This document shows positions 1,400-20,615 of a stretch of DNA of 64,000 nucleotides, piece by piece. Under the pieces are notes generated by a model that ran no database searches, had not been told where the DNA came from, and worked only from the letters and a program-made list of their open reading frames with translations. How positions within the stretch are numbered: position 1 is the first letter of the stretch; every line of letters starts with the position of its first letter. The stretch is from sequence record PV654397.1; one strand, written 5' to 3'. A program made the translations under genes and the position numbers.

Positions 1400-1445
1400 T
1401 TTGGATACACCTATGCACCCTGTGGGCTAGTTTTTGTCTATGCGT
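1400..1445 (-). ncRNA. CCC-N3-GGGUGC motif RNA candidate, copy 1
   Basis: GCCCACAGGGTGC (1415-1427, reverse strand) 21 nt downstream of TTGACT-17-TATTAT; no ORF follows. Confidence 0.45.
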
Positions 1446-1447
1446 AT

Positions 1448-1487
1448 ATAATAGCAAAGGGACTGACCGGAGTCAATCCCTTTTTTT
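1448..1487 (-). promoter_or_regulatory. fused intrinsic terminator and sigma70 promoter
   Basis: Hairpin GGGATTGAC-TCCG-GTCAGTCCC-TTT whose left arm is a TTGACT -35, 17 bp before TATTAT. Confidence 0.7.
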
Positions 1488-1499
1488 ATTCTTTTTTTG

Positions 1500-1700
1500 T
1501 TAGATGATTCTCCAATCATCAACGATCATGGTAAGATACCGAACCAGTGATTCGAGTGATTCGTGTTCTCGATAGTCTGCCGCTCCACCAGCGGTACAAG
1601 TACAGCCGATTAAGCCGTTTTGTAGTTCCTGGATCTTTACGTCGATCTGGTTGGCTTTAGCTTCTTTCAGTACTTCAACCAGGGCGATAGCGATAGACAT
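1500..1700 (-). CDS. hypothetical early protein (66 aa)
   Basis: ORF with GGAG SD behind a leader hairpin. Confidence 0.75.
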   Translation of the reverse strand: MSIAIALVEVLKEAKANQIDVKIQELQNGLIGCTCTAGGAADYREHESLESLVRYLTMIVDDWRII

Positions 1701-1755
1701 AATGTTTTACTCCAAACTATTGGCGGGAGAACTATTCCCCCGCTCTATGTAAAAC

Positions 1756-1783
1756 ATTATACATTACTGGTTAGTACTGTCAA
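1756..1783 (-). promoter_or_regulatory. sigma70-type early promoter (representative of more than 25 similar cassettes in 1-20 kb)
   Basis: TTGACA-16-TATAAT followed by GTTTTACATAGAG and a GC-rich hairpin. Confidence 0.8.
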
Positions 1784-1790
1784 ATAGTTT

Positions 1791-2048
1791 TTATGAAATA
1801 TCTTCGATGTAGTCGGCCCATTTCATTTTTTCAGTACTGTCAATGGCTACCGGATTATTTGGATCAAACCATTCACCATCACCGCAATACATACCCACGG
1901 CTACGGTTTTATAGCCATCCTGGGCCGTACACCACGACATTGCACGATAGATATGGCCTTTAACTGGTTGCAGTACTGGTAACGTTTTATGGTCTTCTAC
2001 GTAGGCCATAGCTTGAGGATTTACCCGATATTGTGTGAACTGATCCAT
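1791..2048 (-). CDS. hypothetical early protein (85 aa)
   Basis: ORF with own TTGACA promoter and AGGGG SD. Confidence 0.7.
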   Translation of the reverse strand: MDQFTQYRVNPQAMAYVEDHKTLPVLQPVKGHIYRAMSWCTAQDGYKTVAVGMYCGDGEWFDPNNPVAIDSTEKMKWADYIEDIS

Positions 2049-2124
2049 TATGTTTCCCCTTGTAGTTAGTAAAGTTATTACATCAGTACTATCAAGCTAT
2101 GTCAATAGTACTGAAATAAAACTT

Positions 2125-2349
2125 TTAGATTAGATTATTGAGGCCGTCAATGGTAGACTCACTTTCTTCTTTCTCCCATTGTCGGTAGTACTTCCATGCT
2201 TCATGATAGGTGGCGATTAGTTCATCTTTTTGATCCTGGTTACATGCCAGTACTGAATCACGGTGAGCGGTGTTATAGATAGAATCGAATGATTTCTTCT
2301 CTTCTGCCAGGTTAGCTACTTCCCGCATCAGTTCATCAAAGTTAGCCAT
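2125..2349 (-). CDS. hypothetical early protein (74 aa)
   Basis: ORF with AAGGAG SD, promoter and leader hairpin. Confidence 0.75.
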   Translation of the reverse strand: MANFDELMREVANLAEEKKSFDSIYNTAHRDSVLACNQDQKDELIATYHEAWKYYRQWEKEESESTIDGLNNLI

Positions 2350-2416
2350 TTTATTACTCCTTTTAGTGGGGGAGGATATCTCCCCCTATGCAAAACATTA
2401 TACTTTGTTTTAGTTA

Positions 2417-2680
2417 TTATGCAAGTACTTTTTTCATATAAACATTAAATTCTACACCGCCGTAACCTTCCACGATGATATGTTTTGCGTTATCACGTTT
2501 GCACATAGTGAAACCGTTGTTGATATGTTCTGCATTTTCCAGGGCGACATCACCGATAGCGGCACATACGGCACTAATAACAGTATTCCGCAAAGTACTG
2601 GTATCATTGGCGGTCATAGTAGTTTGCAGTACTACGTTGTCGTATACGTGTGCATTGATAGTGATTTCGATAGTGTTCAT
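2417..2680 (-). CDS. hypothetical early protein (MNTIEITI...)
   Basis: Start trimmed from 2734; AGGAG SD precedes ATG at 2680. Confidence 0.75.
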   Translation of the reverse strand: MNTIEITINAHVYDNVVLQTTMTANDTSTLRNTVISAVCAAIGDVALENAEHINNGFTMCKRDNAKHIIVEGYGGVEFNVYMKKVLA

Positions 2681-2767
2681 GGTGTATCTCCTGGACTTGA
2701 GGGGAAACCATTTCCCCCTCTCGATATAAAACATTATACGTTAATCTAACTACAATGCAAGTACTTT

Positions 2768-2959
2768 TTAAATTTTATTTCCGATATAGTCCGGTCTATT
2801 CTTTTCGGTCATACGCTTTGCTAATGTCTGCATATGGCTTATAGCGTTCAAGGTGTCTTCCTCCAGGGATGAATCAAGATAATCAGGATCATTCTTCACC
2901 TTGCAATGATTATGATATCGTAGTACTGCCAGTACTTTTTTAACTTCTTCTACTGTCAT
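2768..2959 (-). CDS. hypothetical early protein (63 aa)
   Basis: Start overlaps stop of the upstream gene (translational coupling). Confidence 0.65.
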   Translation of the reverse strand: MTVEEVKKVLAVLRYHNHCKVKNDPDYLDSSLEEDTLNAISHMQTLAKRMTEKNRPDYIGNKI

Positions 2960-3228
2960 AATAAGTACCCCACTTCGTTAGCTTTCAGGTTAGTATCAAT
3001 CATCAGTGGATTTTTGTAGTTCACAAAACGATTAGTTTTTTCGATAGCAAATCCCATATAATCCAGCTTACTAACAGTACATTCATTCTTAAAAACTTCT
3101 TTCGCTGCATCGATTGCTGATTGCATGGATAACCGACCATCTAAATTAATGTTTCCAAATGATCCACCAGCAGAAGTAGGATTACCGTTCATATCTTTAA
3201 TGATCATAGTAGCGGAGTAGCTAGACAT
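2956..3228 (-). CDS. hypothetical early protein (90 aa)
   Basis: ORF with AAGGA SD, promoter and leader hairpin. Confidence 0.75.
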   Translation of the reverse strand: MSSYSATMIIKDMNGNPTSAGGSFGNINLDGRLSMQSAIDAAKEVFKNECTVSKLDYMGFAIEKTNRFVNYKNPLMIDTNLKANEVGYLL

Positions 3229-3281
3229 AATTTTGTTTCCTTTTAGTATCGGGGAGAACTATTCTCCCCTTGATGTAAACT

Positions 3282-3309
3282 ATTATACAGTACTGGTATA
3301 CTTTGTCAA
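3282..3309 (-). promoter_or_regulatory. sigma70-type early promoter with AGTACT 9 bp after the -35
   Basis: TTGACA aagtatacc AGTACT g TATAAT. Confidence 0.8.
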
Positions 3310-3312
3310 TAC

Positions 3313-3534
3313 TTAATTACGGTTAAAATGATATGTGCCTTTATCATCCTGTACGCCCCATACTGATTTACCATCAACACCAGTGAAGCCGGATTGTAAT
3401 TCAATATGGAAACCATTATTATCAACTACAAAAACTTTTTTATTTTCATCCCGATAACATTGATATTCTGAATCAACATTAAAGGCCGCATCATTCAGTA
3501 GATTGGAAGCGTAAATGCAAGTCATTGTAGTCAT
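3313..3534 (-). CDS. hypothetical early protein (73 aa)
   Basis: ORF with AAGGA SD, promoter and leader hairpin. Confidence 0.7.
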   Translation of the reverse strand: MTTMTCIYASNLLNDAAFNVDSEYQCYRDENKKVFVVDNNGFHIELQSGFTGVDGKSVWGVQDDKGTYHFNRN

Positions 3535-3654
3535 GATTTTATTCCTTATTGCCAGGGAGAACCGTTCCCCCTCTCGATATAAAACATTATACTTGATTCT
3601 AAGTACAATGCAAGTACTTTTTAAAAAATAGTTTTCAGTACTGAATACTTATAT

Positions 3655-3705
3655 AATAGATACACTTCCGCACCCTATGGGTCAGTGAGTTATCTCTCAA
3701 TGGAT
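3655..3705 (-). ncRNA. CCC-N3-GGGUGC motif RNA candidate, copy 2
   Basis: TGAG-AGATAA-CTCA hairpin then ACCCATAGGGTGC...GTGTATCT behind a fused terminator/promoter (3708-3746). Confidence 0.5.
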
Positions 3706-3754
3706 ATATAATAGCAAAGGGACTGACCGGAGTCAATCCCTTTTTTAATCTTTT

Positions 3755-4339
3755 TTATCGTGTTACCTTACTTGCTGCCACATCACGCTTTTTATAGTAC
3801 TGATTCCAGATATTGCTGGTTAAACCGTAATCAAGTACTTTAATAAGTCCATTACGATCCTGGCCGATATTCTGTTTTCTGATATCTCTTATCGTTAGTG
3901 TTGATAATGTATCATCAACGTGTTGTAGTGCATCAGCAAAGCGGTGCTGGCGTTCGATTGCATTACGTTTAATATTGTACTTTAATTCATTGCACGCGTT
4001 TACGTGCTTCACACTGCCTTTGCTTGCAGTACTCAACCGATCCATAACGATAAACATATTATCAGGATCGCATAAATGCATATGCACCTTTGCAAAGTAC
4101 TGTTTCAACTGAGGGCGGTCATAGTCTAAAAAATTCCATACCTTACATTCAGTTTCATTTTGTTCTACACCCGCATCACAATTCGCGACCTTAATCACTA
4201 ACCGATCATTTAAAGCGAATACTATACGGGAAGAACCAGCACCGATGATCTCCAGGCCAGCTAACCGACAAGCTGAAAGGATCTCTTTGTTGGTTTCCAT
4301 TTCTGACAGTGTACGGATGAATTTAGTATAATTACGCAT
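3755..4339 (-). CDS. Ser/Thr protein kinase-like protein (T7 gp0.7-type single kinase domain)
   Basis: Gly loop IGAGSSRIVF, LVIKVA Lys, NETE alphaC Glu, catalytic RDIRKQN, DYG (DFG equivalent); start trimmed to MRNYTKF after AAGGAG. Confidence 0.8.
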   Translation of the reverse strand: MRNYTKFIRTLSEMETNKEILSACRLAGLEIIGAGSSRIVFALNDRLVIKVANCDAGVEQNETECKVWNFLDYDRPQLKQYFAKVHMHLCDPDNMFIVMDRLSTASKGSVKHVNACNELKYNIKRNAIERQHRFADALQHVDDTLSTLTIRDIRKQNIGQDRNGLIKVLDYGLTSNIWNQYYKKRDVAASKVTR

Positions 4340-4370
4340 TGCATGTTCTCCTTGAGTTAATGAAACTATA

Positions 4371-4613
4371 TTACAGTACTTTACTATCAATGGCAACTAC
4401 TTTTTTAACATTAACGGCGTGGATCACTTCCTTCGTGTTTTTAGTACTGAATACTTTCGCCGCTCCTTGTTCGACCGTGATACGATAGCGACCATTAACA
4501 TCAACCATATTAATAAAGTCCGGCGTGCTGAATGGTGTTGTTTTACATTTGAGTACTGTTAACAGTTCCACCAGCGATGTAGTTTCTTTGATACGTTTTT
4601 CTAAAGTAATCAT
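4371..4613 (-). CDS. hypothetical early protein (MITLEKRI...)
   Basis: Start trimmed; preceded by a 57-bp promoter cassette near-identical to that at 4890-4946. Confidence 0.7.
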   Translation of the reverse strand: MITLEKRIKETTSLVELLTVLKCKTTPFSTPDFINMVDVNGRYRITVEQGAAKVFSTKNTKEVIHAVNVKKVVAIDSKVL

Positions 4614-4670
4614 TTTGTTTCCCCCGTGTTGGTATGTACATATAGTACTAAAACATTTGAGTACTGTCAA

Positions 4671-4889
4671 TTAGATAATATTATATTTCTTAAAATAAAA
4701 TGCGTCTTGTGTTGGTTGATACTCGATACCGTTACCGTTATTGACTTCAACTAATAAACCTTTGTCAATTAGTTTTTTAATAGTACGATACCCTTGTTGA
4801 AAATTGGTAAAATGTGAATCATTACGAAAGGTATAACCGTGCTTAACTGCTTCATCAATAGTTTTCTTTTCGATTTTAGATAATTTCAT
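4671..4889 (-). CDS. small hypothetical protein, possibly winged-helix-like (MKLSKIEK...)
   Basis: Start trimmed; TIKKLIDKGLLVEV resembles a wHTH recognition helix and wing (weak). Confidence 0.65.
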   Translation of the reverse strand: MKLSKIEKKTIDEAVKHGYTFRNDSHFTNFQQGYRTIKKLIDKGLLVEVNNGNGIEYQPTQDAFYFKKYNII

Positions 4890-4942
4890 TTTGTTTCTCC
4901 CGTGTTGGTATGTGTACATAGTACTAAAACAATTGAGTACTG

Positions 4943-5197
4943 TCAACGTGATATTAGTTTTATTTTCTTATTGTATTGTTGATGCTCATAAAGGTTTATC
5001 TTTCCTGTGTTCTCGATTACTATCCTGTTGTTAGTGTCCACGTCGATTACACGCAGTTTCCCGTTGCTTAACTTCCTAGGTAATAGGTTACCATTAATAA
5101 ACTCATTAGCAAGCTGTACGGCCTTTGTGATGATTCTCTGAGGTGCTTTATAGTGTACCCGTAAGATGTTATCTTTATATAGTTGAACCTTAATCAT
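4943..5197 (-). CDS. hypothetical early protein (84 aa)
   Basis: ORF with AGGA SD. Confidence 0.65.
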   Translation of the reverse strand: MIKVQLYKDNILRVHYKAPQRIITKAVQLANEFINGNLLPRKLSNGKLRVIDVDTNNRIVIENTGKINLYEHQQYNKKIKLISR

Positions 5198-5258
5198 TTT
5201 GTTTGTCCTATAAAAAAGGCGGGAACTGATCCCGCCGTGTTGTTAGTACTGCAAGTTA

Positions 5259-5654
5259 TTAGATAACCTGGCGGCGTTTACTGTATACTGTTACACGATT
5301 ACCCTTACGATCATGTCGGATCTCTTTCTGGTTGCGAATCAGTTCACTTGGACGCTTAAGGTTTGCCAGGTGATCCGCGTGAGTCCATGCGGTGTGGTTT
5401 ACCTGTACTTTGATATCAGAATCAGCGATAAACTCATCTTGTGCGTCAAGTATTGCCGCCAGCATATCCGCTCGTTTTAGTTCTGCTGCTGTCAGTACTG
5501 GCTCAGGTGAATTCACAATATCAGAGATTTCTTTGAACTGTACGGCCCAGCGTTGACCTTTCGGTGCTGTCGTTCCCATGTCTTTAAATGCTGCTCCTTC
5601 CTCGCGTGCAACAATACGGGCAGCTTCACGGGTAGCGTAGAATTTAGTAATCAT
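5259..5654 (-). CDS. early protein, paralog of 18945-19211
   Basis: Shared ATRE.ARI.AR..GA.FKDMG...G.RWA and DRKGNRVTVY segments. Confidence 0.75.
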   Translation of the reverse strand: MITKFYATREAARIVAREEGAAFKDMGTTAPKGQRWAVQFKEISDIVNSPEPVLTAAELKRADMLAAILDAQDEFIADSDIKVQVNHTAWTHADHLANLKRPSELIRNQKEIRHDRKGNRVTVYSKRRQVI

Positions 5655-5749
5655 GGTATACATCCTATTAGTTAAGTTAGTACTACAAGTTAGAGTCTAT
5701 TATAAAGTACTATCTGGGCAATGTCAAATAGTACTTTAAATGGATTCTA

Positions 5750-6073
5750 TTACATGTCTTTCTTACGTTTTACATCGTGGTAGCGAACTGTTATTTCTTT
5801 GTTGATCTCTTCCTCGATGCGGTGAATAACTTTTTCTTTCGGGTTGAAACCTATTACAGTTTCCTTAATGATTTCTAAACCCGTGTACTCGCCTTGTGTG
5901 CCGTAACCGTATGTAAAGGTTTCGTGTCCCAGGTCTTCCCAGCGATCACCAATCAATGCGGACACGTAGCAGGAGTGGTAAGTATTGCCGTGGCTATCAG
6001 TCCACCGATTAACTTTAATGTCAAAGGAGGTTACAATTTTCAGTTCTACTTTCTGGGTAAGGATCATAGCCAT
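5750..6073 (-). CDS. early protein, paralog of 12949-13272
   Basis: Shared RWTDS.GNTYHSC, FTYGY and VKRKKD segments. Confidence 0.8.
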   Translation of the reverse strand: MAMILTQKVELKIVTSFDIKVNRWTDSHGNTYHSCYVSALIGDRWEDLGHETFTYGYGTQGEYTGLEIIKETVIGFNPKEKVIHRIEEEINKEITVRYHDVKRKKDM

Positions 6074-6160
6074 TTTTATTTCTCTCTCTTTGTTAGGAGG
6101 GGAACCATTCCCCTCGCTTGATGTAAACTATTATACAGTACTAAGATACTTTGTCAATAC

Positions 6161-6343
6161 TTATTTTTTGGAAAGTTTACGCATTAATTCTACGCTTTCT
6201 TGTGAACGTTTTGCTACTTGACAAGCTGCATGGGCAGTAAACATTTTTGTATAGTCTGACGCTTTGCCACCGAACCGAGCGGCACGTTCACGGGCACTTG
6301 GAACTAATACGATTTCTTTCTTACAGATAGTGCACTTAGCCAT
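6161..6343 (-). CDS. small basic protein with CxxC...HxxC (possible Zn ribbon)
   Basis: Start trimmed to MAKCTICKK; ends AHAAC. Confidence 0.7.
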   Translation of the reverse strand: MAKCTICKKEIVLVPSARERAARFGGKASDYTKMFTAHAACQVAKRSQESVELMRKLSKK

Positions 6344-6431
6344 TTTAATTTCTCTCTCTTTGTTAGGAGGGGAACCGTTTCCCCTCACTTGATGTAAACT
6401 ATTATACAGTACTAAGATACTTTGTCAATAC

Positions 6432-6707
6432 TTAAGTATTGTAAATGTCGTGAATAGTGATAAAGTTTTTACGACCGTAAACATGTAAATCAGTATCAAT
6501 GTAGTGCTTATCAAGTACATCCTCGACGCTTAAAGACGTGTCGTGAATATCTTCATAAAATTGTGGATCAACAATCGTGCTTAAGTCATCTGGCGTTAAC
6601 TTATCGTTAAGACATTGAACCGCCTGGATATCTGCTTCACGTTTCCATTGTTCCAGATTAGTAGTCAGTACTTGCTCGATTTCGTTAGCTGTAAGTAAAG
6701 TCCGCAT
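6432..6707 (-). CDS. acidic hypothetical early protein (91 aa)
   Basis: ORF with AAGGA SD and own promoter. Confidence 0.7.
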   Translation of the reverse strand: MRTLLTANEIEQVLTTNLEQWKREADIQAVQCLNDKLTPDDLSTIVDPQFYEDIHDTSLSVEDVLDKHYIDTDLHVYGRKNFITIHDIYNT

Positions 6708-6771
6708 TTTAATGTTTCCTTATCAGTGGTTGATGTAAGTATTATACTCGTTTAATTTCTATTGTCAAACT

Positions 6772-6856
6772 ATTTTATCAGGGGAGTTTTTCGTATGTCT
6801 TACTCCTGGACTACTTAACGGGGTTACTTATTTCGTTCCCCGTCCTGATGTAAAAC
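6772..6856 (-). ncRNA. two-hairpin RNA candidate with AAG-N4-ACGAAAA loop, copy A
   Basis: Behind TTGCAT/TATAAT promoter; no start codon; near-identical copy at 18262-18346. Confidence 0.55.
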
Positions 6857-6937
6857 ATTATACTTGATTCTAAGTACAATGCAAGTACTTTTTTAAAAAT
6901 AGTTTTCAGTACTTGATAGTACTAGCCACCAGCAAAC

Positions 6938-6985
6938 AATAGATACATTTATGCACCCTGTGGGCTGATTTGTTTCTATGCGTAT
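6938..6985 (-). ncRNA. CCC-N3-GGGUGC motif RNA candidate, copy 3
   Basis: GCCCACAGGGTGC...ATGTATCT behind a fused terminator/promoter (6986-7023). Confidence 0.45.
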
Positions 6986-7032
6986 ATAATAGCAAAGGGA
7001 CTGACCGGAGTCAATCCCTTTTTCAAATATTT

Positions 7033-7182
7033 TTAAACTTCTTTCGGGTTGCGATATGTGATAGCGTTCGGGTACATTTGTTTAATGTTATTCCATGCCT
7101 GGTTAACATTATAACCACTTGATCGAATCAGTTGGTTATTACCGACACCTTGAAACACTACTTCAAATAAGAATTCTTTCAT
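7033..7182 (-). CDS. small hypothetical protein (49 aa, MKEFLFEV...; not in ORF track)
   Basis: ATGA overlap with upstream gene and GAGGTG SD; ends just before a terminator. Confidence 0.65.
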   Translation of the reverse strand: MKEFLFEVVFQGVGNNQLIRSSGYNVNQAWNNIKQMYPNAITYRNPKEV

Positions 7183-7352
7183 GCTTTCACCTCTCGATCT
7201 GCTTTGCCTTTACGCCAGGCTGTTGCTAATTGTTCGCGTTGCCATAAGTCGAGTGATACGTAAAGTTTTGCATTATCACCCTTCGGATATTCGCCAGTAG
7301 TACCAATCCGATAAAACAGATCTTTCAGTACTGTTAATTCTACCTGGACCAT
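7179..7352 (-). CDS. small hypothetical protein (MVQVELTV...)
   Basis: Start trimmed from 7454; GAGGA SD and leader hairpin. Confidence 0.7.
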   Translation of the reverse strand: MVQVELTVLKDLFYRIGTTGEYPKGDNAKLYVSLDLWQREQLATAWRKGKADREVKA

Positions 7353-7438
7353 TATACTTTCCTCTTTGTTCGGAGGGGAACTATTCCCCTTCCGATATAA
7401 AACATTATACACTTTATTCAGTACTGTGCAAGTACTTT

Positions 7439-7651: not shown

Positions 7652-7724
7652 TTTTCTTTCCTCTTAGTGGGGAGAATCATTTCTCCCCTTCATGTAAACT
7701 ATTATACAGTACTGGATTGCATTG

Positions 7725-14315: not shown

Positions 14316-14798
14316 TTATGCTTCAACTTTGCGATGAGCTTCGATCCATTCCTCGCGAGTCATACCACTGGAGTTAATCGCGTCCAGTACTACCGCAATG
14401 CAGTTACCACGCACCGGAATCAGATATTCTTCCCCGTTGTCCAGTACTACCGCTACGCGTTCCTGAATCCATTTTTTGGCTTTTACTTCTGGCTTGTCTT
14501 CCCCATACTTAACCGCCAGGGCTTTTTGTGCCATCTCTGTAACTACTTCCAGATCCAATCCAACTACTGCCGCCTGGATACTTTCAATTGTTGCTTGTAG
14601 TTCTGCTTCACGGGCCGCCTTTGCCGCTTCAATTTCTGCCGCTTTATTTGCTTGTAGTTCTTTCGCAGTACTGTACGCGATGTTAAAATTATTGCGTACC
14701 GCTTTCATGGTATCGTTATCCAGTTCAGCCAGGATCTCAGCCGCGACGTTAGTTTCATTTGCTACCAGTGCTTTGATGAATGATTTTACATTAGCCAT
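14316..14798 (-). CDS. H-NS-like protein (coiled-coil N-terminus, H-NS-type C-terminal domain with altered DNA-binding loop)
   Basis: LDNGEEYLIPVRGNCIAVVLDAINSSGMTREEWI aligns without gaps to E. coli H-NS [34 protein letters not shown]; Ala/Glu-rich coiled coil ending GLDLE. Confidence 0.55.
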   Translation of the reverse strand: MANVKSFIKALVANETNVAAEILAELDNDTMKAVRNNFNIAYSTAKELQANKAAEIEAAKAAREAELQATIESIQAAVVGLDLEVVTEMAQKALAVKYGEDKPEVKAKKWIQERVAVVLDNGEEYLIPVRGNCIAVVLDAINSSGMTREEWIEAHRKVEA

Positions 14799-14859
14799 TT
14801 TATAAATCCTCAATTAAAGTTTAGTTTACGTTTATTAGTGTATCAAAGTTTTCTCGACG

Positions 14860-14915
14860 TGTCCAGTTTTTCGTTCGACTTACTGGCGGTCTACTTAGTG
14901 CTCCCCGTCTTGATG
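14860..14915 (-). ncRNA. diverged copy C of the AAG-N4-ACGAAAA hairpin RNA, in the leader of the H-NS-like gene
   Basis: ACGGGGA...AAGTAG...CCAGT-AAGTCGAACGAAAA-ACTGG. Confidence 0.45.
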
Positions 14916-15031
14916 TAATACATTCTACGCTTTTCTGTGGTAATGTCAACTACTTTCTTAAAACTATTTTCAAAGTATCTCAGTACTACGATACTACAAA
15001 AACAAAAAAGCCCACCAGGTGGGCTATGTAC

Positions 15032-15262
15032 TTAATCAGTGAGTAAAATATTAAACACTTTACCATTTAACGTTATTGGTGCACTGCTACCAGGCTCAAG
15101 ATCCGTTAATATACCTGCAATCGCTTTATCATTGGCGACCTTTCCAGTGTCCAACAGTACTACAGTACTGATAAGATTAACGCTCGTTTCAATATCATAA
15201 TGCACGGCGTTAAGTAGTTGTGTAGTACTGCTTTCGTTAAGTAAAACAATTCGCTTAGTCAT
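15032..15262 (-). CDS. hypothetical early protein (76 aa)
   Basis: GGGGT SD. Confidence 0.65.
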   Translation of the reverse strand: MTKRIVLLNESSTTQLLNAVHYDIETSVNLISTVVLLDTGKVANDKAIAGILTDLEPGSSAPITLNGKVFNILLTD

Positions 15263-15283
15263 GATGTTACCCCGTAGTATCTA

Positions 15284-15583
15284 TCAACGGCAATTAATAA
15301 CGCCGGTATGCGTTACTTTCTCAGTATCCATTACAGTGACCGAACCGCGTTTAGTACTGGCATCATAATAAATTGTTGTGCTACCGTTTTCGTCTTCTTC
15401 ATGGAACGGGCCGTTTTTAAATGCTTCCGGCTGGATCTCTAAATCCTTTAATACAATCTCGCCAGTTCTTTCATCGGTCATTGCAACAGTGCACTGAATG
15501 AATTTTTCACTACTTACATCTAATGACGCATTAACAGCGAAAGAGGAAACAGATAAAGCCAGGGCGATGATTGCAATTTTCAT
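15284..15583 (-). CDS. secreted/periplasmic protein with signal peptide and terminal Cys pair
   Basis: MKIAIIALALSVSSFAVNA signal peptide; Cys near both ends of the mature chain. Confidence 0.7.
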   Translation of the reverse strand: MKIAIIALALSVSSFAVNASLDVSSEKFIQCTVAMTDERTGEIVLKDLEIQPEAFKNGPFHEEDENGSTTIYYDASTKRGSVTVMDTEKVTHTGVINCR

Positions 15584-15667
15584 TTGATTATCCTTAGTTA
15601 CCAGGGGGAACCGCTCCCCCTTGCGATGTAAAATATTATACAGTACTAAAAACTATTATCAAGTACT

Positions 15668-15904
15668 TTATGATTTTTTATAAAACATTTCAGCCGTGAT
15701 ATTTTTACCCGTTGGTTGTACTTTATCCAGAATTTTTTGATGCCCAGGCCGTCCAAATGAATATGATCCGTAAACCGTAAACCAGTAGTTACCCTCAGTG
15801 TTTACATGTACAGCACAATAGGGTACACCCCGCGATTCATCACTAGTAAAGTGTACTACCGTTCCCGTTACATTCGCAGACGTTGATTTGATTTGTTCAA
15901 GCAT
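15668..15904 (-). CDS. hypothetical early protein (78 aa)
   Basis: AAGGA SD, promoter and hairpin. Confidence 0.7.
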   Translation of the reverse strand: MLEQIKSTSANVTGTVVHFTSDESRGVPYCAVHVNTEGNYWFTVYGSYSFGRPGHQKILDKVQPTGKNITAEMFYKKS

Positions 15905-16013
15905 TTTCTTATTCCTTAGTTACCAGGGGAACCGCTCCCCCTATGCAAAACATTATACGCGTTTAAAAACTAATTGCAAGTATTTTAATAAAAAGTATTT
16001 GAAAAAATAGTTG

Positions 16014-16042
16014 TTGACAAGTGCATCCAGTACTGGCATAAT
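16014..16042 (+). promoter_or_regulatory. plus-strand sigma70 promoter antisense to the early genes
   Basis: TTGACA-17-CATAAT with AGTACT 9 bp after the -35. Confidence 0.75.
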
Positions 16043-16047
16043 TACTA

Positions 16048-16145
16048 CATCAAGACGAAACAGTCACTAACCCACCGGGTGCCGAGATCCGTCTATTAAA
16101 TGATTCAGTACTGAAAAAGTAACGGGGAGTTATTATCTCCCCGCG
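16048..16145 (+). ncRNA. CCC-N3-GGGUGC motif RNA candidate, copy 6
   Basis: GAC-GAAACA-GTC hairpin, ACCCACCGGGTGC, ends at hairpin CGGGGAG-TTATTAT-CTCCCCG; no ORF. Confidence 0.55.
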
Positions 16146-16148
16146 TTG

Positions 16149-16370
16149 TTATTTTGTAAGGTATAAACAGAAGTCACCTTTATTTGCTACGCCGCCAGTG
16201 TAACGCGAGGAATAGTTAGAAACGTCCTGGACTTCTGCTATTACCAGGGTATCATCATTCAATTCGTCGCAGAAGCAAACGGCTGGATCTTGTACGCCGA
16301 TTTTGTCAGCATGTTCCCGCATAGATTTAACCAGTGCTTCCAGTTGGGAAAGAGTAGTGATATTAGCCAT
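16149..16370 (-). CDS. hypothetical early protein (MANITTLS...)
   Basis: Start trimmed; GAGGA SD and hairpin. Confidence 0.7.
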   Translation of the reverse strand: MANITTLSQLEALVKSMREHADKIGVQDPAVCFCDELNDDTLVIAEVQDVSNYSSRYTGGVANKGDFCLYLTK

Positions 16371-16454
16371 TGTATTTTCCTCATTACCAGGGAGAACCAT
16401 TTCTCCCTTTGATGTAAACCATTATACAGTACTGAAAACTAATTGCAAGTACTT

Positions 16455-16643
16455 TTAATTAAATTCCATAAAATCATTTTCAACGTGCACAACAATCTGA
16501 TTATTTTTAAAGGACGCAGAAAACTCTATACAATCATAAACCGCTTTTTCTGTTACCAGACTATGAGCACCAATCGGATTAATTGGGGATTGAATTGTTT
16601 CAATCTCGTTACCTTGTTCATTAACGATTAAAATATTAAACAT
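16455..16643 (-). CDS. hypothetical early protein (62 aa)
   Basis: AGGAG SD; promoter leader duplicated at 16870-16910. Confidence 0.7.
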   Translation of the reverse strand: MFNILIVNEQGNEIETIQSPINPIGAHSLVTEKAVYDCIEFSASFKNNQIVVHVENDFMEFN

Positions 16644-16682
16644 TGCCGTTACTCCTGGATAGTGTTAACTCGATATAAAGTA

Positions 16683-16865
16683 TTATACGCCTTTATTGCT
16701 TAGTGTCCAGTGATCACGCATCATACGCCCCGCACGATCCCAGCTAGTAGGCATGGGTATGCCTTGCAATTCGTTAGGGGAGATCTCGACCTCGATCCCT
16801 ACATCAATAACAGTCATTCCAGCTTTCGCAGCTTGCTCGCGGATAACCTCAGATAATGTTGTCAT
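16683..16865 (-). CDS. hypothetical early protein (60 aa)
   Basis: AGGAG SD and own promoter. Confidence 0.65.
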   Translation of the reverse strand: MTTLSEVIREQAAKAGMTVIDVGIEVEISPNELQGIPMPTSWDRAGRMMRDHWTLSNKGV

Positions 16866-16939
16866 GATTAAAGCTCCTGGATAGTGTTAACTCGATATAA
16901 AGTATTATACAGTACTGAAAACTAATTGCAAGTACTTTT

Positions 16940-17200
16940 TCAATATTGTTTGTCGTCGTCTTCCTCGATGAATTGACCGACGAAATGATCTACTTTCGCT
17001 TTGAGGCTTTTATAATCTTCTTCTACTTCCTTTAAACGTTCCTGGTAGTATTCCAGTGCTTGAATATACGCCGCCTCAGCAGTTTTTGCACGCATAGCTA
17101 AATTCATTCCACGCGTTTCATCAAATAGCCAATAACCATCGGTGCAATGACTGATAGATAATGATTTACTTAGTGCTGTATAGCTAATTACTTTACTCAT
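16940..17200 (-). CDS. hypothetical phage protein with C-terminal coiled coil (86 aa)
   Basis: GAGGG SD; YWLFDETRGMNLAMRAKT motif typical of phage early proteins (recollection, not searched). Confidence 0.75.
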   Translation of the reverse strand: MSKVISYTALSKSLSISHCTDGYWLFDETRGMNLAMRAKTAEAAYIQALEYYQERLKEVEEDYKSLKAKVDHFVGQFIEEDDDKQY

Positions 17201-17257
17201 TAGATAACCCTCAGTAAAGGCGGGAACTATTACCCGCCATTATCTCAGTACTGAATA

Positions 17258-17497
17258 TTACATTCCAACCATTGCAGCACGGATCGCAGTAGTGCTATAC
17301 TTAAAGCCGTCCGGCGTTGTAGTAGTACCGTTGGCTTTTAATCTGCGGTACATACATTCCGCAGCAATATCTTTAGTTCTACTTTGTGCGATGCAACTTT
17401 GAGCAAGCCGATACAATGACTCACCGTTATTAATCCAAAGGCTTACATTCCAATGAGTTTTGTTTTTGTGACCGTTGTAAGTTTTAGTACTAGCCAT
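17258..17497 (-). CDS. early protein, paralog of 19300-19539
   Basis: Shared GHKNKTHWNVSLWINN and TPDGFKYSTTAIRAAMVGM. Confidence 0.8.
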   Translation of the reverse strand: MASTKTYNGHKNKTHWNVSLWINNGESLYRLAQSCIAQSRTKDIAAECMYRRLKANGTTTTPDGFKYSTTAIRAAMVGM

Positions 17498-17587
17498 TTT
17501 TAAATCCTCGTTTGAGCGGGGAACCACTCCCCGCCTCGATATAAAGTATTATACGCTTTTAAACTTAGTTTGCAAGTACTTTTTAAA

Positions 17588-18199
17588 TTAATATTCGATT
17601 GATTCCACTACGCCATCAATAACATTGAATTGATACTCGTTACCCTCAATCAGTGCCGTAATGTTTTCAGTAGTGAATTGATCCTCATATGCATTCTCTA
17701 AATCACGGTACAACTTGCGGGACAATTCACGAATAGTTTCAGTGAGTAGTTCCTCAAGCTCATTAACTAACGTTTCTTGTTTTGCGGTTAAATCAGTGTA
17801 AGCCGATTCAATGTACCCGCTTACCGTGTTTTCGTGTGCGTAGCGAGAGTGTGAACGTTCTACACTCATTGCCAAATCATCTTCATTCAACAAGTGACGG
17901 ATAGAACGATATTTCGTTAACGCTTTAATCTTGCGTAAAAACTTCACTGCGTCCACGCTGTCAGTACTGATTGATGCACCGTCACCCTGGGACCAAAAAC
18001 CGCTGAATTGTATTTCAGCTTCATTAATGCCATATTCCGGTAGTACTGTTTCTTTATAGTATTCAATTTCACTTTCAGAAAAATAATTGTCGTTTGAGTT
18101 TTTTTCACGTTCCCGAACCAGTTCGATAGCTGACGTTTGTTGTTCTGCGTTCAATTCAGAAAAAGCCATAACATAAGTAGTAGTAGTGATAGTTTTCAT
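17588..18199 (-). CDS. FSGFWSQGDG-motif protein (family seen on plasmids and phages, often auto-annotated as an antitoxin)
   Basis: TTTYVMAFSELNAEQQ N-terminus and IQFSGFWSQGDGAS core; family assignment from memory. Confidence 0.6.
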   Translation of the reverse strand: MKTITTTTYVMAFSELNAEQQTSAIELVREREKNSNDNYFSESEIEYYKETVLPEYGINEAEIQFSGFWSQGDGASISTDSVDAVKFLRKIKALTKYRSIRHLLNEDDLAMSVERSHSRYAHENTVSGYIESAYTDLTAKQETLVNELEELLTETIRELSRKLYRDLENAYEDQFTTENITALIEGNEYQFNVIDGVVESIEY

Positions 18200-18261
18200 T
18201 TTGTAACCCTCATTCAGTAGTTGATGTAAGTATTATACGCTTTTAAAAACATTTGTCAAAC

Positions 18262-18346
18262 TATTTTATCAGGGGAGTTTTTCGTGTGCCTTACTCCTGG
18301 GCTACTTAACGGGAAGTTACTTATTTCGTTCCCCGTCCTGATGTAA
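18262..18346 (-). ncRNA. two-hairpin RNA candidate with AAG-N4-ACGAAAA loop, copy B
   Basis: Near-identical to 6772-6856, with differences in the N4 loop segment and one stem. Confidence 0.55.
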
Positions 18347-18423
18347 AACATTATACGCCTTTAAACATAGTTTGCAAGTACTTTTTAAAAATAGTTTTCA
18401 GTACTGAATATTAAAAAAAAGTA

Positions 18424-18596
18424 TTGACAGCATTATCAAGTACTGGCATAATATACCCCATGACAACAGCTAACCCACCGGGTGCACAATTGTAACTATA
18501 CTAAACTAATTTTGCTATAGATACACTCCCGCACCCTATGGGCTACGGCTTATCTGCCAATGAATACATTATGCCAGTACTGACAAAATAAGTCAA
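18424..18596. promoter_or_regulatory. convergent promoter pair, each followed by a CCC-N3-GGGTGC motif (copies 7 and 8), motifs 45 bp apart
   Basis: Plus TTGACA-17-CATAAT 18424-18452, motif 18473-18485; minus TTGACT-17-CATAAT 18596-18568, motif 18543-18531. Confidence 0.65.
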
Positions 18597-18626
18597 TACC
18601 GGCAATTGTAAAGATTTGTAAACTGC

Positions 18627-18857
18627 TTATACTGCAATCGCGTCCAGGCTGTAATAATAATAAGTGCCGTATTGGTGTACTTTATTACCTTTTATTTCAG
18701 TACTGAATGAATCCGAACGATTTGCATATGATGTTAATTTAAAGTACTTTGATTTGCTGATACGTTGCCATACACCACAGATCCGCTGTAAGTAAGTAGT
18801 TTTATTCGTGGTAGTATCTTTTACGGTTTTAACTTCAGTCATATACATATTAGTCAT
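18627..18857 (-). CDS. hypothetical early protein (76 aa)
   Basis: GGAG SD, promoter and hairpin. Confidence 0.7.
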   Translation of the reverse strand: MTNMYMTEVKTVKDTTTNKTTYLQRICGVWQRISKSKYFKLTSYANRSDSFSTEIKGNKVHQYGTYYYYSLDAIAV

Positions 18858-18944
18858 TTTTATTACTCCAGGTTATAGGCGGGAAGTGTTCCCGCTCTCG
18901 ATGTAAAACATTATACGCCATTAAACATAGTTTGCAAGTACTTT

Positions 18945-19211
18945 TTATTCAAGTACTGCAATCTTTTTTGTACGGTACACGGTCACGCGGTTGCCCTTTC
19001 GGTCGAGCTTTATTTCTACCACTCGACGCGATACACTATCGGGACTTTTTAAGGCCGCTAACCAGTACTGTAATGATCTGGCGGTACTACGCTTTACAAT
19101 GGCCCAACGTTTACCACGTTCCGATTGTACGCCCATATCTTTAAACGTTGCCCCGTCCTGGCGTGCGGCGATCCGAGCTTGTTCACGCGTCGCAAAATAC
19201 TTAATATTCAT
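18945..19211 (-). CDS. early protein, paralog of 5259-5654
   Basis: Start trimmed to MNIKYFATRE; shared motifs. Confidence 0.75.
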   Translation of the reverse strand: MNIKYFATREQARIAARQDGATFKDMGVQSERGKRWAIVKRSTARSLQYWLAALKSPDSVSRRVVEIKLDRKGNRVTVYRTKKIAVLE

Positions 19212-19299
19212 GCTGTTGCCCTTATCGTTGGTGTATGAATAAAACACTATTATAAAGTACTATCCCCGTGCAATAGTACTTTAAATAAATTCTATTCTA

Positions 19300-19539
19300 T
19301 TACATTCCAACCATCGCCGCACGGATCGCAGTAGTGCTATATTTGAATCCGTCCGGTGTTTTATCTTGTCCAGTCTGTTCTAAAAATAACATCATATGAC
19401 GGGCCGCATCATTGCGATTAGTGTTGTCGTTAATAAAATCCAGGGCCAACCGATACAATCCCTCATCGTTATTAATCCACAGGCTTACATTCCAATGAGT
19501 TTTGTTTTTGTGACCTAAGAACATTTTTGATTTAGCCAT
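19300..19539 (-). CDS. early protein, paralog of 17258-17497
   Basis: Start trimmed to MAKSKMF; shared motifs. Confidence 0.8.
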   Translation of the reverse strand: MAKSKMFLGHKNKTHWNVSLWINNDEGLYRLALDFINDNTNRNDAARHMMLFLEQTGQDKTPDGFKYSTTAIRAAMVGM

Positions 19540-19632
19540 TTTTTTAATCCTCTTATATAGTGGGGAACTATTCCCCACCTGATGTAAAACATTATACGCT
19601 TTTAAACATAGTTTGCAAGTACTTTATTAAAC

Positions 19633-19995
19633 TTATTTGTAAATTTTGCCACTGTCAGCCCATACCAGGAAACGAGGCATATTATCCCATGCATCTTGTT
19701 TTAAGTTTAAGCCGTGCAATTCCTCAGTTGTTGCCATCCCTGGTACTGGCTTACTACACACCGCGAAATTTTCGCCCATATACTGATAAACCATCGTCAA
19801 ATCATTTGAGATCATTATATGGATCATTGAATCCAGCATCAAAGTAGCGGCGTATTGTTCACGCTTAAGCGGCAACATTGCAATAAGTTCCCGATAAGCT
19901 GCAATGTGAATTTTTACCGTTTCAGCCGGAAGACCTTTCATCTCATCGCGGAAGTTTACCAGGTTAAGCATGATTTTATTGATTTGAGTCGCCAT
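19633..19995 (-). CDS. hypothetical early protein (MATQINKI...), first ORF of the early block
   Basis: Start trimmed; SD, leader hairpin and promoter. Confidence 0.7.
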   Translation of the reverse strand: MATQINKIMLNLVNFRDEMKGLPAETVKIHIAAYRELIAMLPLKREQYAATLMLDSMIHIMISNDLTMVYQYMGENFAVCSKPVPGMATTEELHGLNLKQDAWDNMPRFLVWADSGKIYK

Positions 19996-20305
19996 CGTTT
20001 TAATCTCTCTTAATGTGTAGCGGGAAGTGTTCCCGCTCTCGATGTAAAACATTATACGCTTTTATCAGTACGGTGCAAGTACTTTCTACAAATACTTTTA
20101 AAATAGTTTTCTTTCTATATAGGAGTACTATTATTCAGTACTGAATCAATCCACCAAATCATCCCTATACCCCGTAAAACGGCCTCAGACGCATTCTAAC
20201 GCATTAATACACCTAAGCTATACATTTGCACCACTCCCAACAATCCAGGGCGTTACGGGCCGTTTAAACGCGTTAAATTATTTTCAATTATTTTGTTTTT
20301 AGGTA

Positions 20306-20499
20306 TTGACTTGATCCTGAAAAAGCGTATAATTACTACATAGACGCGAGAAAGCGGAAACCCCAGAGGGTGCGGAATTACGCCCAAAATTCAAGATATA
20401 AAAAAAGGATACACTCCCGCACCCTAGCAGGTAAACGCACTTTCTCAGTACTGAAATATAGTACCATAGTCCGGCCCAGGATAGCAAGCAAATTAATTA
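20306..20499. promoter_or_regulatory. second convergent promoter pair with CCC-N3-GGGTGC motifs (copies 9 and 10), 45 bp apart
   Basis: Plus TTGACT-16-TATAAT 20306-20333, motif ends 20373; minus TTGCTA-18-TACTAT, degenerate motif begins 20419. Confidence 0.55.
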
Positions 20500-20521
20500 A
20501 AACTTTTTTGCTTCCAGGGTA

Positions 20522-20615
20522 TTGCTTTATTTTTTCAGTACTGTATAATAGTTCCATCAAGTCGAGAAAGACTCAAGCCCACCGGGTGCATAGTTACGCC
20601 CAAAATTCAGTACTG
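20522..20615 (+). ncRNA. promoter plus CCC-N3-GGGUGC motif RNA candidate, copy 11
   Basis: TTGCTT-16-TATAAT, GTC-GAGAAA-GAC hairpin, GCCCACCGGGTGC; no ORF. Confidence 0.5.

What the first reader, a model, noticed from the sequence alone, without database searches (positions are those of the whole stretch)
1400..20615. Eleven-copy family of promoter-driven structured RNA candidates with covarying hairpin plus CCC-N3-GGG-UGC core
Seen: motif (A/G)CCCA(C/T/G)(A/C)GGGTGC at 1415, 3670, 6953, 9309, 10965, 18531 and 20419 (degenerate) on minus, and at 16070, 18473, 20362 and 20577 on plus. It lies 21-28 nt downstream of a sigma70 -10 where measured, and no ORF follows directly. In most copies a first hairpin has a covarying stem around a purine-rich loop: GAC-GAAACA-GTC, CGC-GAGAAA-GCG, GTC-GAGAAA-GAC, GACG-AGAA-CGTC, TGAG-AGATAA-CTCA, GGC-AGATAA-GCC. 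A 3' UGUA(U/A)CU tail can pair with the 5' end in several. Four copies run antisense to the gene flow. Inference: a multicopy early small RNA acting as a protein decoy or anti-defence RNA, a put/boxB-like antitermination signal, or a replication primer. I do not recognise it as a described family.
Basis: partly seen in the sequence, partly recalled or inferred. Interest (0 to 1): 0.82.

Follow-up and report, generated by a model that had tools for sequence, protein, structure and literature searches.

The report
Conserved early-promoter RNA leader family
The 21.7-kb terminal repeat of this jumbo E. coli phage carries eleven copies of a strong host-type promoter fused to a conserved ~55-nt folded RNA; the RNA matches no described family, occurs in every related jumbo-phage genus sampled and nowhere else searched, and its function is unknown.

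Summary
The window is Escherichia phage WPEC5 (Asteriusvirus, 381 kb), positions 1-64000. A covariance model finds exactly 11 copies, 10 strong and 1 degenerate, all inside the direct terminal repeat (window 1-21662). Each copy is an extended -10 sigma70 promoter followed by a ~55-nt leader. The leader has hairpin H1 (44 different stems, purine-rich loops), a short linker, a near-invariant mini-hairpin RCCC-N3/4-GGGU, then GC-N6-YRYCY-AU.

I collected 154 distinct copies from Asteriusvirus, Mimasvirus, Alcyoneusvirus and Eneladusvirus phages and from metagenomic jumbo contigs. None turned up in Rfam, in 185,579 bacterial and archaeal genomes, in the rest of a 350-kb sister genome, or in the PA5oct repeat.

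About a third of copies point against gene flow. Some of these end at a terminator about 20 nt later (~95-nt orphan RNAs) or sit in convergent pairs. Sense copies are usually followed by a second consensus promoter before the gene.

Best reading: an undescribed, multicopy immediate-early RNA module that a conserved protein binds, serving as a 5' tag on early mRNAs and as a free small RNA. nut/put-like antitermination remains a serious rival. No expression data exist.

The parts
1..21662 (.). Direct terminal repeat (DTR) of phage WPEC5. It contains all 11 copies, and a second identical DTR copy ends the genome record.
   Evidence: Window pos 1 equals record 359665; 2836 nt compared with 0 mismatches; implied length 21662. 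Sister phages have DTRs of 21525 bp and 20993 bp, the latter confirmed by restriction digests (PMC13070987).
1395..1483 (-). Copy c1: terminator hairpin with -35 (1456-1483), promoter TTGACT-17-TATTAT (1448-1476), leader 1395-1452.
   Evidence: (56.4 bits).
3650..3743 (-). Copy c2: terminator hairpin with -35 (3716-3743), promoter 3708-3736, leader 3650-3707. H1 is UGAG-AGAUAA-CUCA.
   Evidence: (63.4 bits).
3586..3613 (-). Second (class C) promoter AGTAC-TTGCAT-16-TATAAT, downstream of c2 and upstream of gene 3313-3534.
6933..7021 (-). Copy c3: terminator hairpin with -35 (6994-7021), promoter 6986-7014, leader 6933-6990 with a weak H1.
   Evidence: (53.8 bits).
6857..6884 (-). Class C promoter downstream of c3.
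9289..9377 (-). Copy c4: promoter TTGACA-17-CATAAT (9349-9377), leader 9289-9346. It heads the unit that holds the DksA/TraR-type gene 8794-9051.
   Evidence: (50.3 bits).
10945..11038 (-). Copy c5: terminator hairpin with -35 (11011-11038), promoter 11003-11031, leader 10945-11002.
   Evidence: 60.6 bits.
10882..10909 (-). Class C promoter downstream of c5.
16014..16143 (+). Copy c6, an orphan antisense unit: promoter 16014-16042, leader 16045-16102, then bidirectional terminator 16123-16143. Predicted RNA is ~95 nt with no ORF.
   Evidence: (48.3 bits).
18424..18505 (+). Copy c7: promoter 18424-18452, leader 18448-18505. It is convergent with c8.
   Evidence: (40.1 bits).
18511..18596 (-). 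Copy c8: promoter 18568-18596, leader 18511-18568. It is convergent with c7.
   Evidence: (46.1 bits).
18350..18377 (-). Class C promoter downstream of c8.
20306..20393 (+). Copy c9: promoter TTGACT-16-TATAAT (20306-20333), leader 20336-20393. It is convergent with c10.
   Evidence: (40.5 bits).
20399..20491 (-). Copy c10, degenerate: weak promoter 20463-20491, leader 20399-20457, core CCUGCUAGGGUGC.
   Evidence: (23.8 bits, E 0.003).
20522..20609 (+). Copy c11: promoter 20522-20549, leader 20552-20609. It points into the ORF-poor, repeat-rich DTR end (20650-21662).
   Evidence: (41.3 bits).

Best explanation
Each copy is a compact transcription unit for a ~55-nt structured RNA module.

Shown from sequence:
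- A very strong extended -10 sigma70 promoter. Its -35 often lies in the 5' arm of an upstream terminator hairpin with a UNCG loop.
- A conserved CAU/CAA 6-8 nt after the -10, taken as the start site.
- H1, starting 2-3 nt after that start, with a variable stem and a G(A/C)GAAA, AGAACAA or AGAUAA loop.
- A 4-5 nt linker.
- The near-invariant mini-hairpin RCCC-N3/4-GGGU.
- Then GC, six purine-rich bases, YRYCY and AU.

Inferred:
- Host RNA polymerase makes this RNA in the first minutes from about 11 sites per terminal repeat (22 per packaged genome).
- The RNA domain itself is the selected product. H1 plus the invariant block form a two-part recognition site for a conserved protein.
- That protein is most likely part of the host transcription, termination or RNA-decay machinery shared by Enterobacterales, or else a conserved phage early protein.
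- In sense copies the module tags the 5' end of early mRNAs. In orphan and convergent copies it is released as a free small RNA. The family therefore works by being bound, either to recruit the factor or to titrate it.
For: Folding.
- All four H1 pairs show changes on both sides: 155 cells, 0 of 500 shuffles reach this, and slid registers collapse.
- There are 44 distinct stems with conserved loop types.
- In the mini-hairpin the R:U pair is A-U in 60 copies and G-U in 38. The innermost C-G becomes U-A in copies from CBB and from a metagenomic contig, scored; a third copy, in Yen9-03, shows the same CCU...AGG change by eye.
- The loop is 3 nt in 81 copies and 4 nt in 22, mixed within single genomes. 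A hairpin tolerates this; a dimer-bound duplex site does not.

Selection.
- The core is identical in 132 of 154 distinct copies from genera that share only about 23-29% ANI (PMC13070987).
- Flanks and H1 stems differ even within one genome, so repeat homogenisation alone cannot explain the conservation.

The RNA itself appears to be the product.
- 15 of 109 copies are followed by a terminator-like hairpin within 120 nt and no ORF. Examples are window 16014-16143 and K64-1 copies 16703-16760(-) and 9322-9379(-).
- An antisense orphan sits in the same region of the early block, in the same orientation, in CBB, GAP32, Serratia BF and Yersinia Yen9-03, with a different but still paired H1.
- Convergent pairs near one DTR end recur in all genera examined.
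- 52 of 109 copies are followed by another promoter within 150 nt, so the gene does not depend on this promoter.

Specificity.
- Only 11 of roughly 45 strong promoters in the DTR carry the leader.
- A 350-kb sister genome has hits only in the DTR-equivalent 19 kb.
Against: There are no transcript data for any phage of this clade in the searched literature, so the start site, RNA ends and abundance are all predicted. No binding partner is identified. Sense copies have no terminator between the leader and the next promoter, so a free small RNA would require processing there. The core stem never varies apart from three U-A cases, so its pairing rests on few events. GGGU can alternatively pair with the downstream YRYCY (90-100% compatible), leaving the fold of the 3' half unresolved. 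A cis role such as antitermination or stabilisation would also explain the sense copies.
Confidence: 0.4

Rival explanations
1. Cis-acting processivity signal, working like a nut or put site. The nascent leader (hairpin plus conserved block) stays attached to the polymerase that made it, with or without a phage or Nus-type factor. It makes that polymerase resistant to terminators and to Rho across the long untranslated stretches and small genes of the early block.
For: - The layout is two-part: a hairpin with a purine-rich loop plus a conserved 12-nt block at the start of early transcription units.
- Many copies start immediately after a terminator, so they reset transcription with a tagged RNA.
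- Sense copies are followed by about 110-335 nt of untranslated RNA.
- Some units contain internal terminators, e.g. window 5218-5236 and GAP32 9199-9228 after copy 8823-8880.
- The phage relies on host polymerase for these promoters, and a DksA/TraR-type protein is encoded in one unit.
Against: About a third of copies face against gene flow, run straight into a terminator or collide with a twin. In those copies antitermination would only produce antisense RNA. Most terminators in the window coincide with the next copy's promoter rather than lying inside units. Nearly every gene has its own consensus promoter. No similarity to any described antitermination RNA was returned.
Confidence: 0.25
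2. 5' stabiliser or processing determinant only. A hairpin 2-3 nt from the triphosphate end protects early mRNAs from 5'-end-dependent decay, and the invariant block is a site for a processing nuclease.
For: - H1 starts 2-3 nt after the predicted start, and in many copies flanking bases extend the stem to the very end.
- Leaders from the class C promoters also begin with a GC hairpin.
Against: A stabiliser does not need an invariant 12-nt block. Six or so copies have almost no H1 stem yet keep the core. Orphan units have no mRNA to protect.
Confidence: 0.12
3. DNA-level element: a promoter-proximal operator, roadblock or non-template-strand hairpin (working like an ops or Q-loading site) read by a DNA-binding or polymerase-binding factor.
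For: - Spacing and orientation relative to the promoter are fixed in all copies.
- CCC-N3-GGG is an inverted repeat.
- Orphan and convergent copies would make sense as promoter-level devices.
Against: H1 stems change by compensatory pairs, which duplex recognition does not require. The spacer is 3 or 4 nt within one genome. Variation is wobble-compatible: R before CCC opposite U, and Y/R in the tail opposite G/U. This fits RNA better than duplex DNA. A non-template single-strand hairpin is not excluded.
Confidence: 0.08
4. A purely architectural repeat: a PeSL-like terminator-promoter cassette kept because it mediates recombination and shuffling of early-gene modules. The leader would be a passenger.
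For: - Composite terminator/promoter structure is present in 52 of 128 upstream regions.
- The region is highly mosaic between close relatives: 40-80% coverage in many pieces.
- PeSLs are described in T4-type phages (PMC4122927).
Against: Recombination-driven homogenisation cannot keep a 12-nt core invariant across genera while H1 stems and flanks diverge with compensatory changes. PeSLs are followed directly by a Shine-Dalgarno sequence and start codon, which is not the case here.
Confidence: 0.05
5. Transcript-primed replication or R-loop origin. The RNA stays hybridised in the A/T-rich stretch after the leader and primes DNA synthesis in the terminal repeat.
For: - A strong promoter is followed by an A/T-rich stretch.
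- Convergent pairs lie near one DTR end.
Against: Eleven origins in 20 kb are not expected. Nothing in the conserved block suggests hybrid stabilisation. There is no origin-type evidence, and the GC-skew flip lies at the DTR boundary, not at the copies.
Confidence: 0.05

Closest known systems
Lambda-type nut sites (boxA plus boxB, N/Nus-dependent antitermination) and the ribosomal RNA operon antiterminator leaders
   Same: Promoter-proximal position in early transcripts. Two-part layout of a small hairpin, whose stem sequence is free and whose loop is purine-rich, next to a conserved short block. The phage depends on host RNA polymerase.
   Different: No sequence or model match was returned. 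Here the hairpin comes first and the conserved block itself folds into a mini-hairpin. There are 11 copies per repeat instead of two per genome. A third of copies are antisense, orphan or convergent. No N-like protein is known.
HK022 put RNAs (protein-independent cis antitermination)
   Same: Structured RNA just downstream of early promoters that could act on the transcribing polymerase without a dedicated ORF.
   Different: By established knowledge, put has two substantial stem-loops. Here there is one 3-5 bp hairpin and one 4-bp hairpin with an invariant sequence. Orphan copies end at terminators. The effect on RNA polymerase is untested.
PeSL composite promoter-terminator cassettes of T4-type phages (PMC2839356, PMC4122927)
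   Same: Multicopy cassettes with a stem-loop immediately upstream of, or here overlapping, a sigma70-type early promoter. They have A/T-rich upstream flanks and sit among small variable early ORFs in a mosaic region.
   Different: PeSLs run straight into a Shine-Dalgarno sequence and start codon. Here a conserved 55-nt structured leader follows, often with a second promoter before the gene. The leader is conserved across genera.
Highly expressed non-coding RNAs in the terminal repeat of Pseudomonas phage PA5oct (PMC7318152)
   Same: A distant relative of the same jumbo-phage lineage makes abundant ORF-less RNAs (2-5% of phage reads) from its long terminal repeat.
   Different: Those RNAs are 236 and 451 nt long and single-copy. 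The covariance model finds no copy of this motif in the PA5oct repeat (best E 0.75).
5'-terminal stem-loop stabilisers of bacterial and phage mRNAs
   Same: A hairpin within 2-3 nt of the predicted 5' end.
   Different: Stabilisers need no invariant downstream block and do not occur as orphan units.

Membership tests
Any described RNA family (Rfam 15, 4227 models) | Score at or above the family's gathering threshold | tested here: not met
   0 hits over the whole window at gathering thresholds. With permissive filters over 1-21500, only two chance-level hits appear elsewhere (E 1.2 and 3.6, about half the gathering score), and none lies on a copy.
tRNA / tmRNA | Cloverleaf or tmRNA detected by ARAGORN | tested here: not met
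   0 genes in 64 kb.
nut-type antiterminator (boxA + boxB) | Small hairpin with a purine-rich GNRA-like loop whose stem sequence is free | tested here: inconclusive
   H1 has 44 different stems. Loops are GCGAAA (23), GAGAAA (19), AGAUAA (10) and AGAACAA (10). The loops are 6-7 nt and were not compared letter by letter with boxB.
nut-type antiterminator (boxA + boxB) | Conserved linear boxA-type block next to the hairpin, recognised by NusB/NusE | tested here: inconclusive
   A conserved 12-nt block exists, but it lies 3' of the hairpin and folds on itself. No model of boxA was available to score it, and no Rfam hit was returned.
nut-type antiterminator (boxA + boxB) | Phage-encoded N-type protein | not tested
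   Ten early proteins near copies gave only a DksA/TraR zinc finger in Pfam. No systematic search was made.
put-type cis antiterminator | Sits in sense orientation between an early promoter and the terminators it overrides | tested here: not met
   This holds for some copies only. 4 of 11 copies in the window, and about a third family-wide, are antisense, orphan or convergent. 15 of 109 are followed by a terminator-like hairpin within 120 nt.
put-type cis antiterminator | Acts on RNA polymerase in cis without protein | not testable with these tools
   Needs transcription data.
PeSL composite promoter-terminator cassette | Stem-loop just upstream of a sigma70-like early promoter, with an A/T-rich upstream flank | tested here: met
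   Window 1456-1483, 3716-3743, 6994-7021 and 11011-11038. 52 of 128 distinct upstream regions family-wide, 26 of them with UNCG loops. Here the hairpin overlaps the -35.
PeSL composite promoter-terminator cassette | Promoter followed directly by the Shine-Dalgarno sequence and start codon of the next gene (PMC4122927) | tested here: not met
   A conserved 55-nt leader follows instead. The next start codon is about 110-335 nt away, usually after another promoter.
5' stabiliser hairpin | Hairpin within a few nt of the real 5' end | tested here: inconclusive
   H1 starts 2-3 nt after the predicted start, but the start is inferred from promoter geometry only.

The most novel reading that the evidence does not exclude
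The terminal repeat of these jumbo phages works as a first-entering RNA factory. About 22 gene copies of a 55-nt aptamer-like RNA are fired from the strongest host-type promoters within the first minutes of infection. The RNA captures a conserved host protein, such as a polymerase-associated, RNA-decay or defence factor, making this an RNA-based host-takeover or anti-defence device. The same domain also marks the phage's own early mRNAs.
Probability: 0.2. Interest if true: 0.85.

Novelty: new variant of a known kind. Interest (0 to 1): 0.62.

Why it matters
Jumbo phages of this clade (121Q, PBECO4, RaK2, GAP32 and CBB relatives) are being characterised for therapy and biocontrol, yet their early programme is a block of unannotated small genes. 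This family gives that block a defined regulatory grammar. There are three promoter classes, and one of them is fused to a conserved RNA with strong covariation. That yields a concrete candidate for how the phage treats host transcription or RNA-handling machinery in the first minutes. It is a ready-made seed (154 distinct copies, one covariance model) for a new RNA family. It would also correct several spurious mini-CDS annotations in deposited genomes. If the RNA proves to be a decoy or a processivity tag, it would be the first RNA-level early takeover element described for this lineage.

Tried and rejected
- Known RNA families: Rfam at gathering and at permissive thresholds, and ARAGORN, found nothing on the copies.
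Rejected as a family feature.
- A base-pairing target in host ribosomal or tRNA genes of the rrnH operon: only G-U-rich matches of a kind that G-rich shuffles also give. Rejected as a lead.
- Presence in the distant relative PA5oct, whose repeat makes abundant ncRNAs: no copy.
- Presence in cellular genomes: 0 matches to a strict promoter-plus-core-plus-tail pattern in 185,579 species genomes.
- Presence in other viruses: an IMG/VR scan gave 90 stretches, but only those on Rak2-like jumbo contigs have the leader anatomy. The rest are unrelated hairpins.
- Coding potential: the record's mini-CDSs over the copies span the promoters, and H1 changes are compensatory rather than codon-like.
- Duplex palindrome operator: disfavoured by the mixed 3/4-nt spacers and by H1 covariation.
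- Choosing between the two pairings of GGGU. Pairing with RCCC shows two scored C-G to U-A double changes, plus a third seen by eye. Pairing with the downstream YRYCY is 90-100% compatible but shows one-sided changes only. This could not be resolved.
- Literature: no transcriptome and no mention of this leader for Asteriusvirus, Mimasvirus, Alcyoneusvirus or Eneladusvirus.

Full report
**Identity of the window.** The first 20 kb match Escherichia phage WPEC5 (PV654397.1, 381,326 bp) at 100% over positions 1-20000. Related records are Asteriusvirus jumbo phages such as 121Q, PBECO4, G17 and fEgEco12. Window position 1 recurs at record position 359,665 with 0 mismatches over 2,836 nt. Window 1-21,662 is therefore the direct terminal repeat (DTR), present at both genome ends. 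Sister phages have DTRs of 21,525 bp and 20,993 bp, the latter confirmed by restriction digests (PMC13070987). CBB has 22,456 bp (PMC5259590).

**Check of the observation.** The looser core CCCANNGGGTGC has 10 exact matches at the stated places and strands. I built a covariance model from 92 copies and ran it without filters over all 64 kb. It returns exactly eleven hits: ten at 40-63 bits and the degenerate copy 20399-20457(-) at 23.8 bits. The next best hit is 12 bits. Every copy lies 20-27 nt (from the -10 to the R of RCCC) behind a sigma70-type promoter. No real ORF follows directly.

**Anatomy.** From the promoter onward a copy has these parts.
- A -35 hexamer TTGACW, a 17-nt spacer and a TG-extended -10 (TATTAT or CATAAT). 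Family-wide, the spacer is 17 nt in 73 of 108 promoters and TG is present in 69.
- In 52 of 128 distinct upstream regions the -35 lies in the 5' arm of a GC hairpin followed by a T-run. The loop is UNCG in 26 of them. Upstream transcription should therefore stop exactly where the new unit starts.
- A conserved CAU/CAA 6-8 nt after the -10, taken as the start site by inference.
- H1, a 3-5 bp stem with a 6-7 nt purine-rich loop.
- A 4-5 nt linker.
- The mini-hairpin RCCC-N3/4-GGGU.
- GC, six purine-rich bases ending in U, then N-Y-R-Y-C-Y and AU. Conservation stops after that.

**Distribution.**
- blastn with one copy finds 68 phage records. All are Rak2-like jumbo phages of Escherichia, Salmonella, Klebsiella, Cronobacter, Pectobacterium, Serratia, Yersinia and Erwinia.
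- In CBB, GAP32, K64-1, Serratia BF and Yersinia fHe-Yen9-03 there are about 10-12 copies each, all in the DTR or early block and in both orientations.
- In the 350-kb genome of the sister phage EC22.5-2 the model finds 10 hits, all within a 19-kb stretch. Sigma70-like promoters occur elsewhere too.
- A pattern scan of IMG/VR returns true members only on Rak2-like jumbo contigs.
- A strict pattern finds 22 stretches in metagenome contigs and none in 185,579 bacterial and archaeal species genomes.
- The DTR of the distant relative PA5oct has no copy, although it makes two abundant ncRNAs (PMC7318152).
- In all I hold 154 distinct copies, of which 132 have the canonical core.

**Is it a folded single strand?**
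- H1: all four pairs change on both sides (155 cells). Pair types include UA, GC, AU, CG, GU and UG. No shuffle out of 500 reaches the observed values, and slid registers collapse. There are 44 distinct stems, while the loops keep a few types.
- Mini-hairpin: the base before CCC is A (60) or G (38) opposite an invariant U. The innermost C-G is replaced by U-A in copies from CBB and from a metagenomic contig, scored. A third copy, in Yen9-03, shows the same CCU...AGG change by eye. The loop is 3 nt in 81 copies and 4 nt in 22, mixed within genomes.
- These features fit an RNA hairpin, or at most a single-stranded DNA hairpin, and not a duplex site.
- The 3' half is unresolved. GGGUG can also pair with the downstream YRYCY: 127, 129, 118, 132 and 132 of 132 canonical copies are compatible. 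The tail varies only Y to Y opposite G and R to R opposite U, while neighbouring columns show transversions. That helix competes with the mini-hairpin and would be rich in G-U pairs. A few copies have broken tails. It may be an alternative state.

**Context.**
- The DTR holds about 45 strong promoter-like sites on the gene strand, in three classes. Class A is the one described here. Class B is TTGACA-16-TATAAT with 12 perfect copies. Class C is AGTAC-TTGCAW-16-TATAAT with 15 copies. Only class A carries the leader.
- In sense copies a class C promoter typically follows 60-100 nt later and then the gene. Family-wide, 52 of 109 copies have another promoter within 150 nt.
- About a third of copies face against gene flow. 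Copy c6 (16014-16143) runs into a bidirectional terminator about 20 nt after the leader, predicting a ~95-nt ORF-less RNA. K64-1, CBB, GAP32, Serratia BF and Yen9-03 have equivalent orphans. The one in the last four sits in the same region of the early block and in the same orientation, with a different but paired H1.
- Convergent pairs (c7/c8 and c9/c10 here; CBB 1008+/1076-, 3818+/3886- and 20840+/20908-) recur near one DTR end.
- Copy c11 fires into the ORF-poor, repeat-rich DTR end.

**Interpretation.**
- The cross-genus invariance of the core, set against divergent flanks and compensating H1 stems, means selection on the element itself and not repeat homogenisation.
- Orphan units are maintained without ORFs, and the promoter is redundant in sense units. 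The RNA domain therefore appears to be the product.
- I read it as a protein-recognition module. It would be a 5' tag on early mRNAs and a free small RNA from orphan and convergent units, acting by recruiting or titrating a conserved partner (confidence 0.4).
- nut/put-like processive antitermination is the main rival (0.25). It fits the two-part layout and the terminator-then-restart design, but not the orphans.
- A stabiliser-only role, a DNA-level role, a PeSL-like recombination-only role and a primer role are less likely, for the reasons given in their entries.
- PeSL cassettes of T4-type phages (PMC4122927) are the closest architectural relative of the terminator-promoter part. They lack the leader.

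**Limits.** No expression data exist for this clade in the literature I could search. The start site, RNA ends and abundance are predictions, and the partner is unknown.

In one search I used the E. coli Chi octamer from memory as a search pattern. I later found it printed in the abstracts of 10.1101/2021.07.08.451572 and PMC13181404. In my private reasoning I also recalled short consensus motifs of well-known bacterial and phage regulatory sites as leads. None was used as evidence, and none belongs to a virus of animals, people or crops or to a toxin.

Noticed in passing
window 1361-54981 (19 sites); within the DTR at 1361, 1585, 3164, 4568, 6926, 8193, 9656, 14179 and 21066 on the minus strand, and 14241 and 21078 on the plus strand: The E. 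coli Chi octamer occurs 19 times where 0.67 are expected. In the DTR, 9 of 11 copies are on the minus strand, the orientation a RecBCD enzyme entering at window position 1 would read. Two sit just downstream of leader copies c1 and c3. This suggests protection of the physical genome ends.
   Followed up: partly
whole window; dense in 20600-22000: AGTACT, often as TCAGTACTGA, occurs 273 times against 22 expected, inside genes as well as between them. It lies in the spacer of class A promoters, abuts the -35 of all 15 class C promoters, and recurs 10-25 nt after the leaders. In relatives, some downstream copies form longer palindromes that resemble SOS-box half-sites; that resemblance comes from memory and was not tested.
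   Followed up: partly
window 1-20000, minus strand: About 45 strong sigma70-type promoters lie in 20 kb, in three sequence classes. Twelve are perfect 12-of-12 consensus promoters with a 16-nt spacer. Nearly every small early gene has its own promoter.
   Followed up: partly
window 1456-1483, 3716-3743, 6994-7021, 11011-11038: Terminator hairpins with UCCG loops whose 5' arm contains the -35 hexamer of the next promoter. This is a PeSL-like composite terminator/promoter (PMC4122927).
   Followed up: yes
window 6767-6850 (-) and 18260-18343 (-): A second ORF-less structured candidate of ~84 nt in two copies, each between a class C and a class B promoter. Predicted multi-helix fold of -19 to -21 kcal/mol, against about -12 for shuffles.
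   Followed up: partly
window 20650-21662: The ORF-poor end of the DTR has short direct repeats (TAGCC-type units at 20772-20880) and many AGTACT palindromes. It is possibly a terminus or packaging-related region.
   Followed up: no
window ~21000-23000: GC skew changes sign just past the DTR boundary, from about -0.09 to +0.2, although genes stay on the minus strand.
   Followed up: no
window 1427-1519, 3635-3736, 6906-6995, 10930-11031, 20253-20387, 20378-20557: Mini-CDSs annotated in the record (WPEC5_CDS0005, 0013, 0022, 0036, 0068, 0069) overlap the promoter-plus-leader units and are probably not genes.
   Followed up: partly
window 8794-9051 (-): A DksA/TraR-type zinc-finger protein (Pfam PF01258, E 3.7e-9) is the only early gene near a copy with a family assignment. 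It lies in the unit headed by copy c4 and could act on host RNA polymerase.
   Followed up: no
L104 (PA5oct) 8263-8498 and 21951-22401: A distant relative's terminal repeat encodes two highly expressed ncRNAs (2-5% of phage reads; PMC7318152). They are unrelated in sequence to the family studied here.
   Followed up: yes
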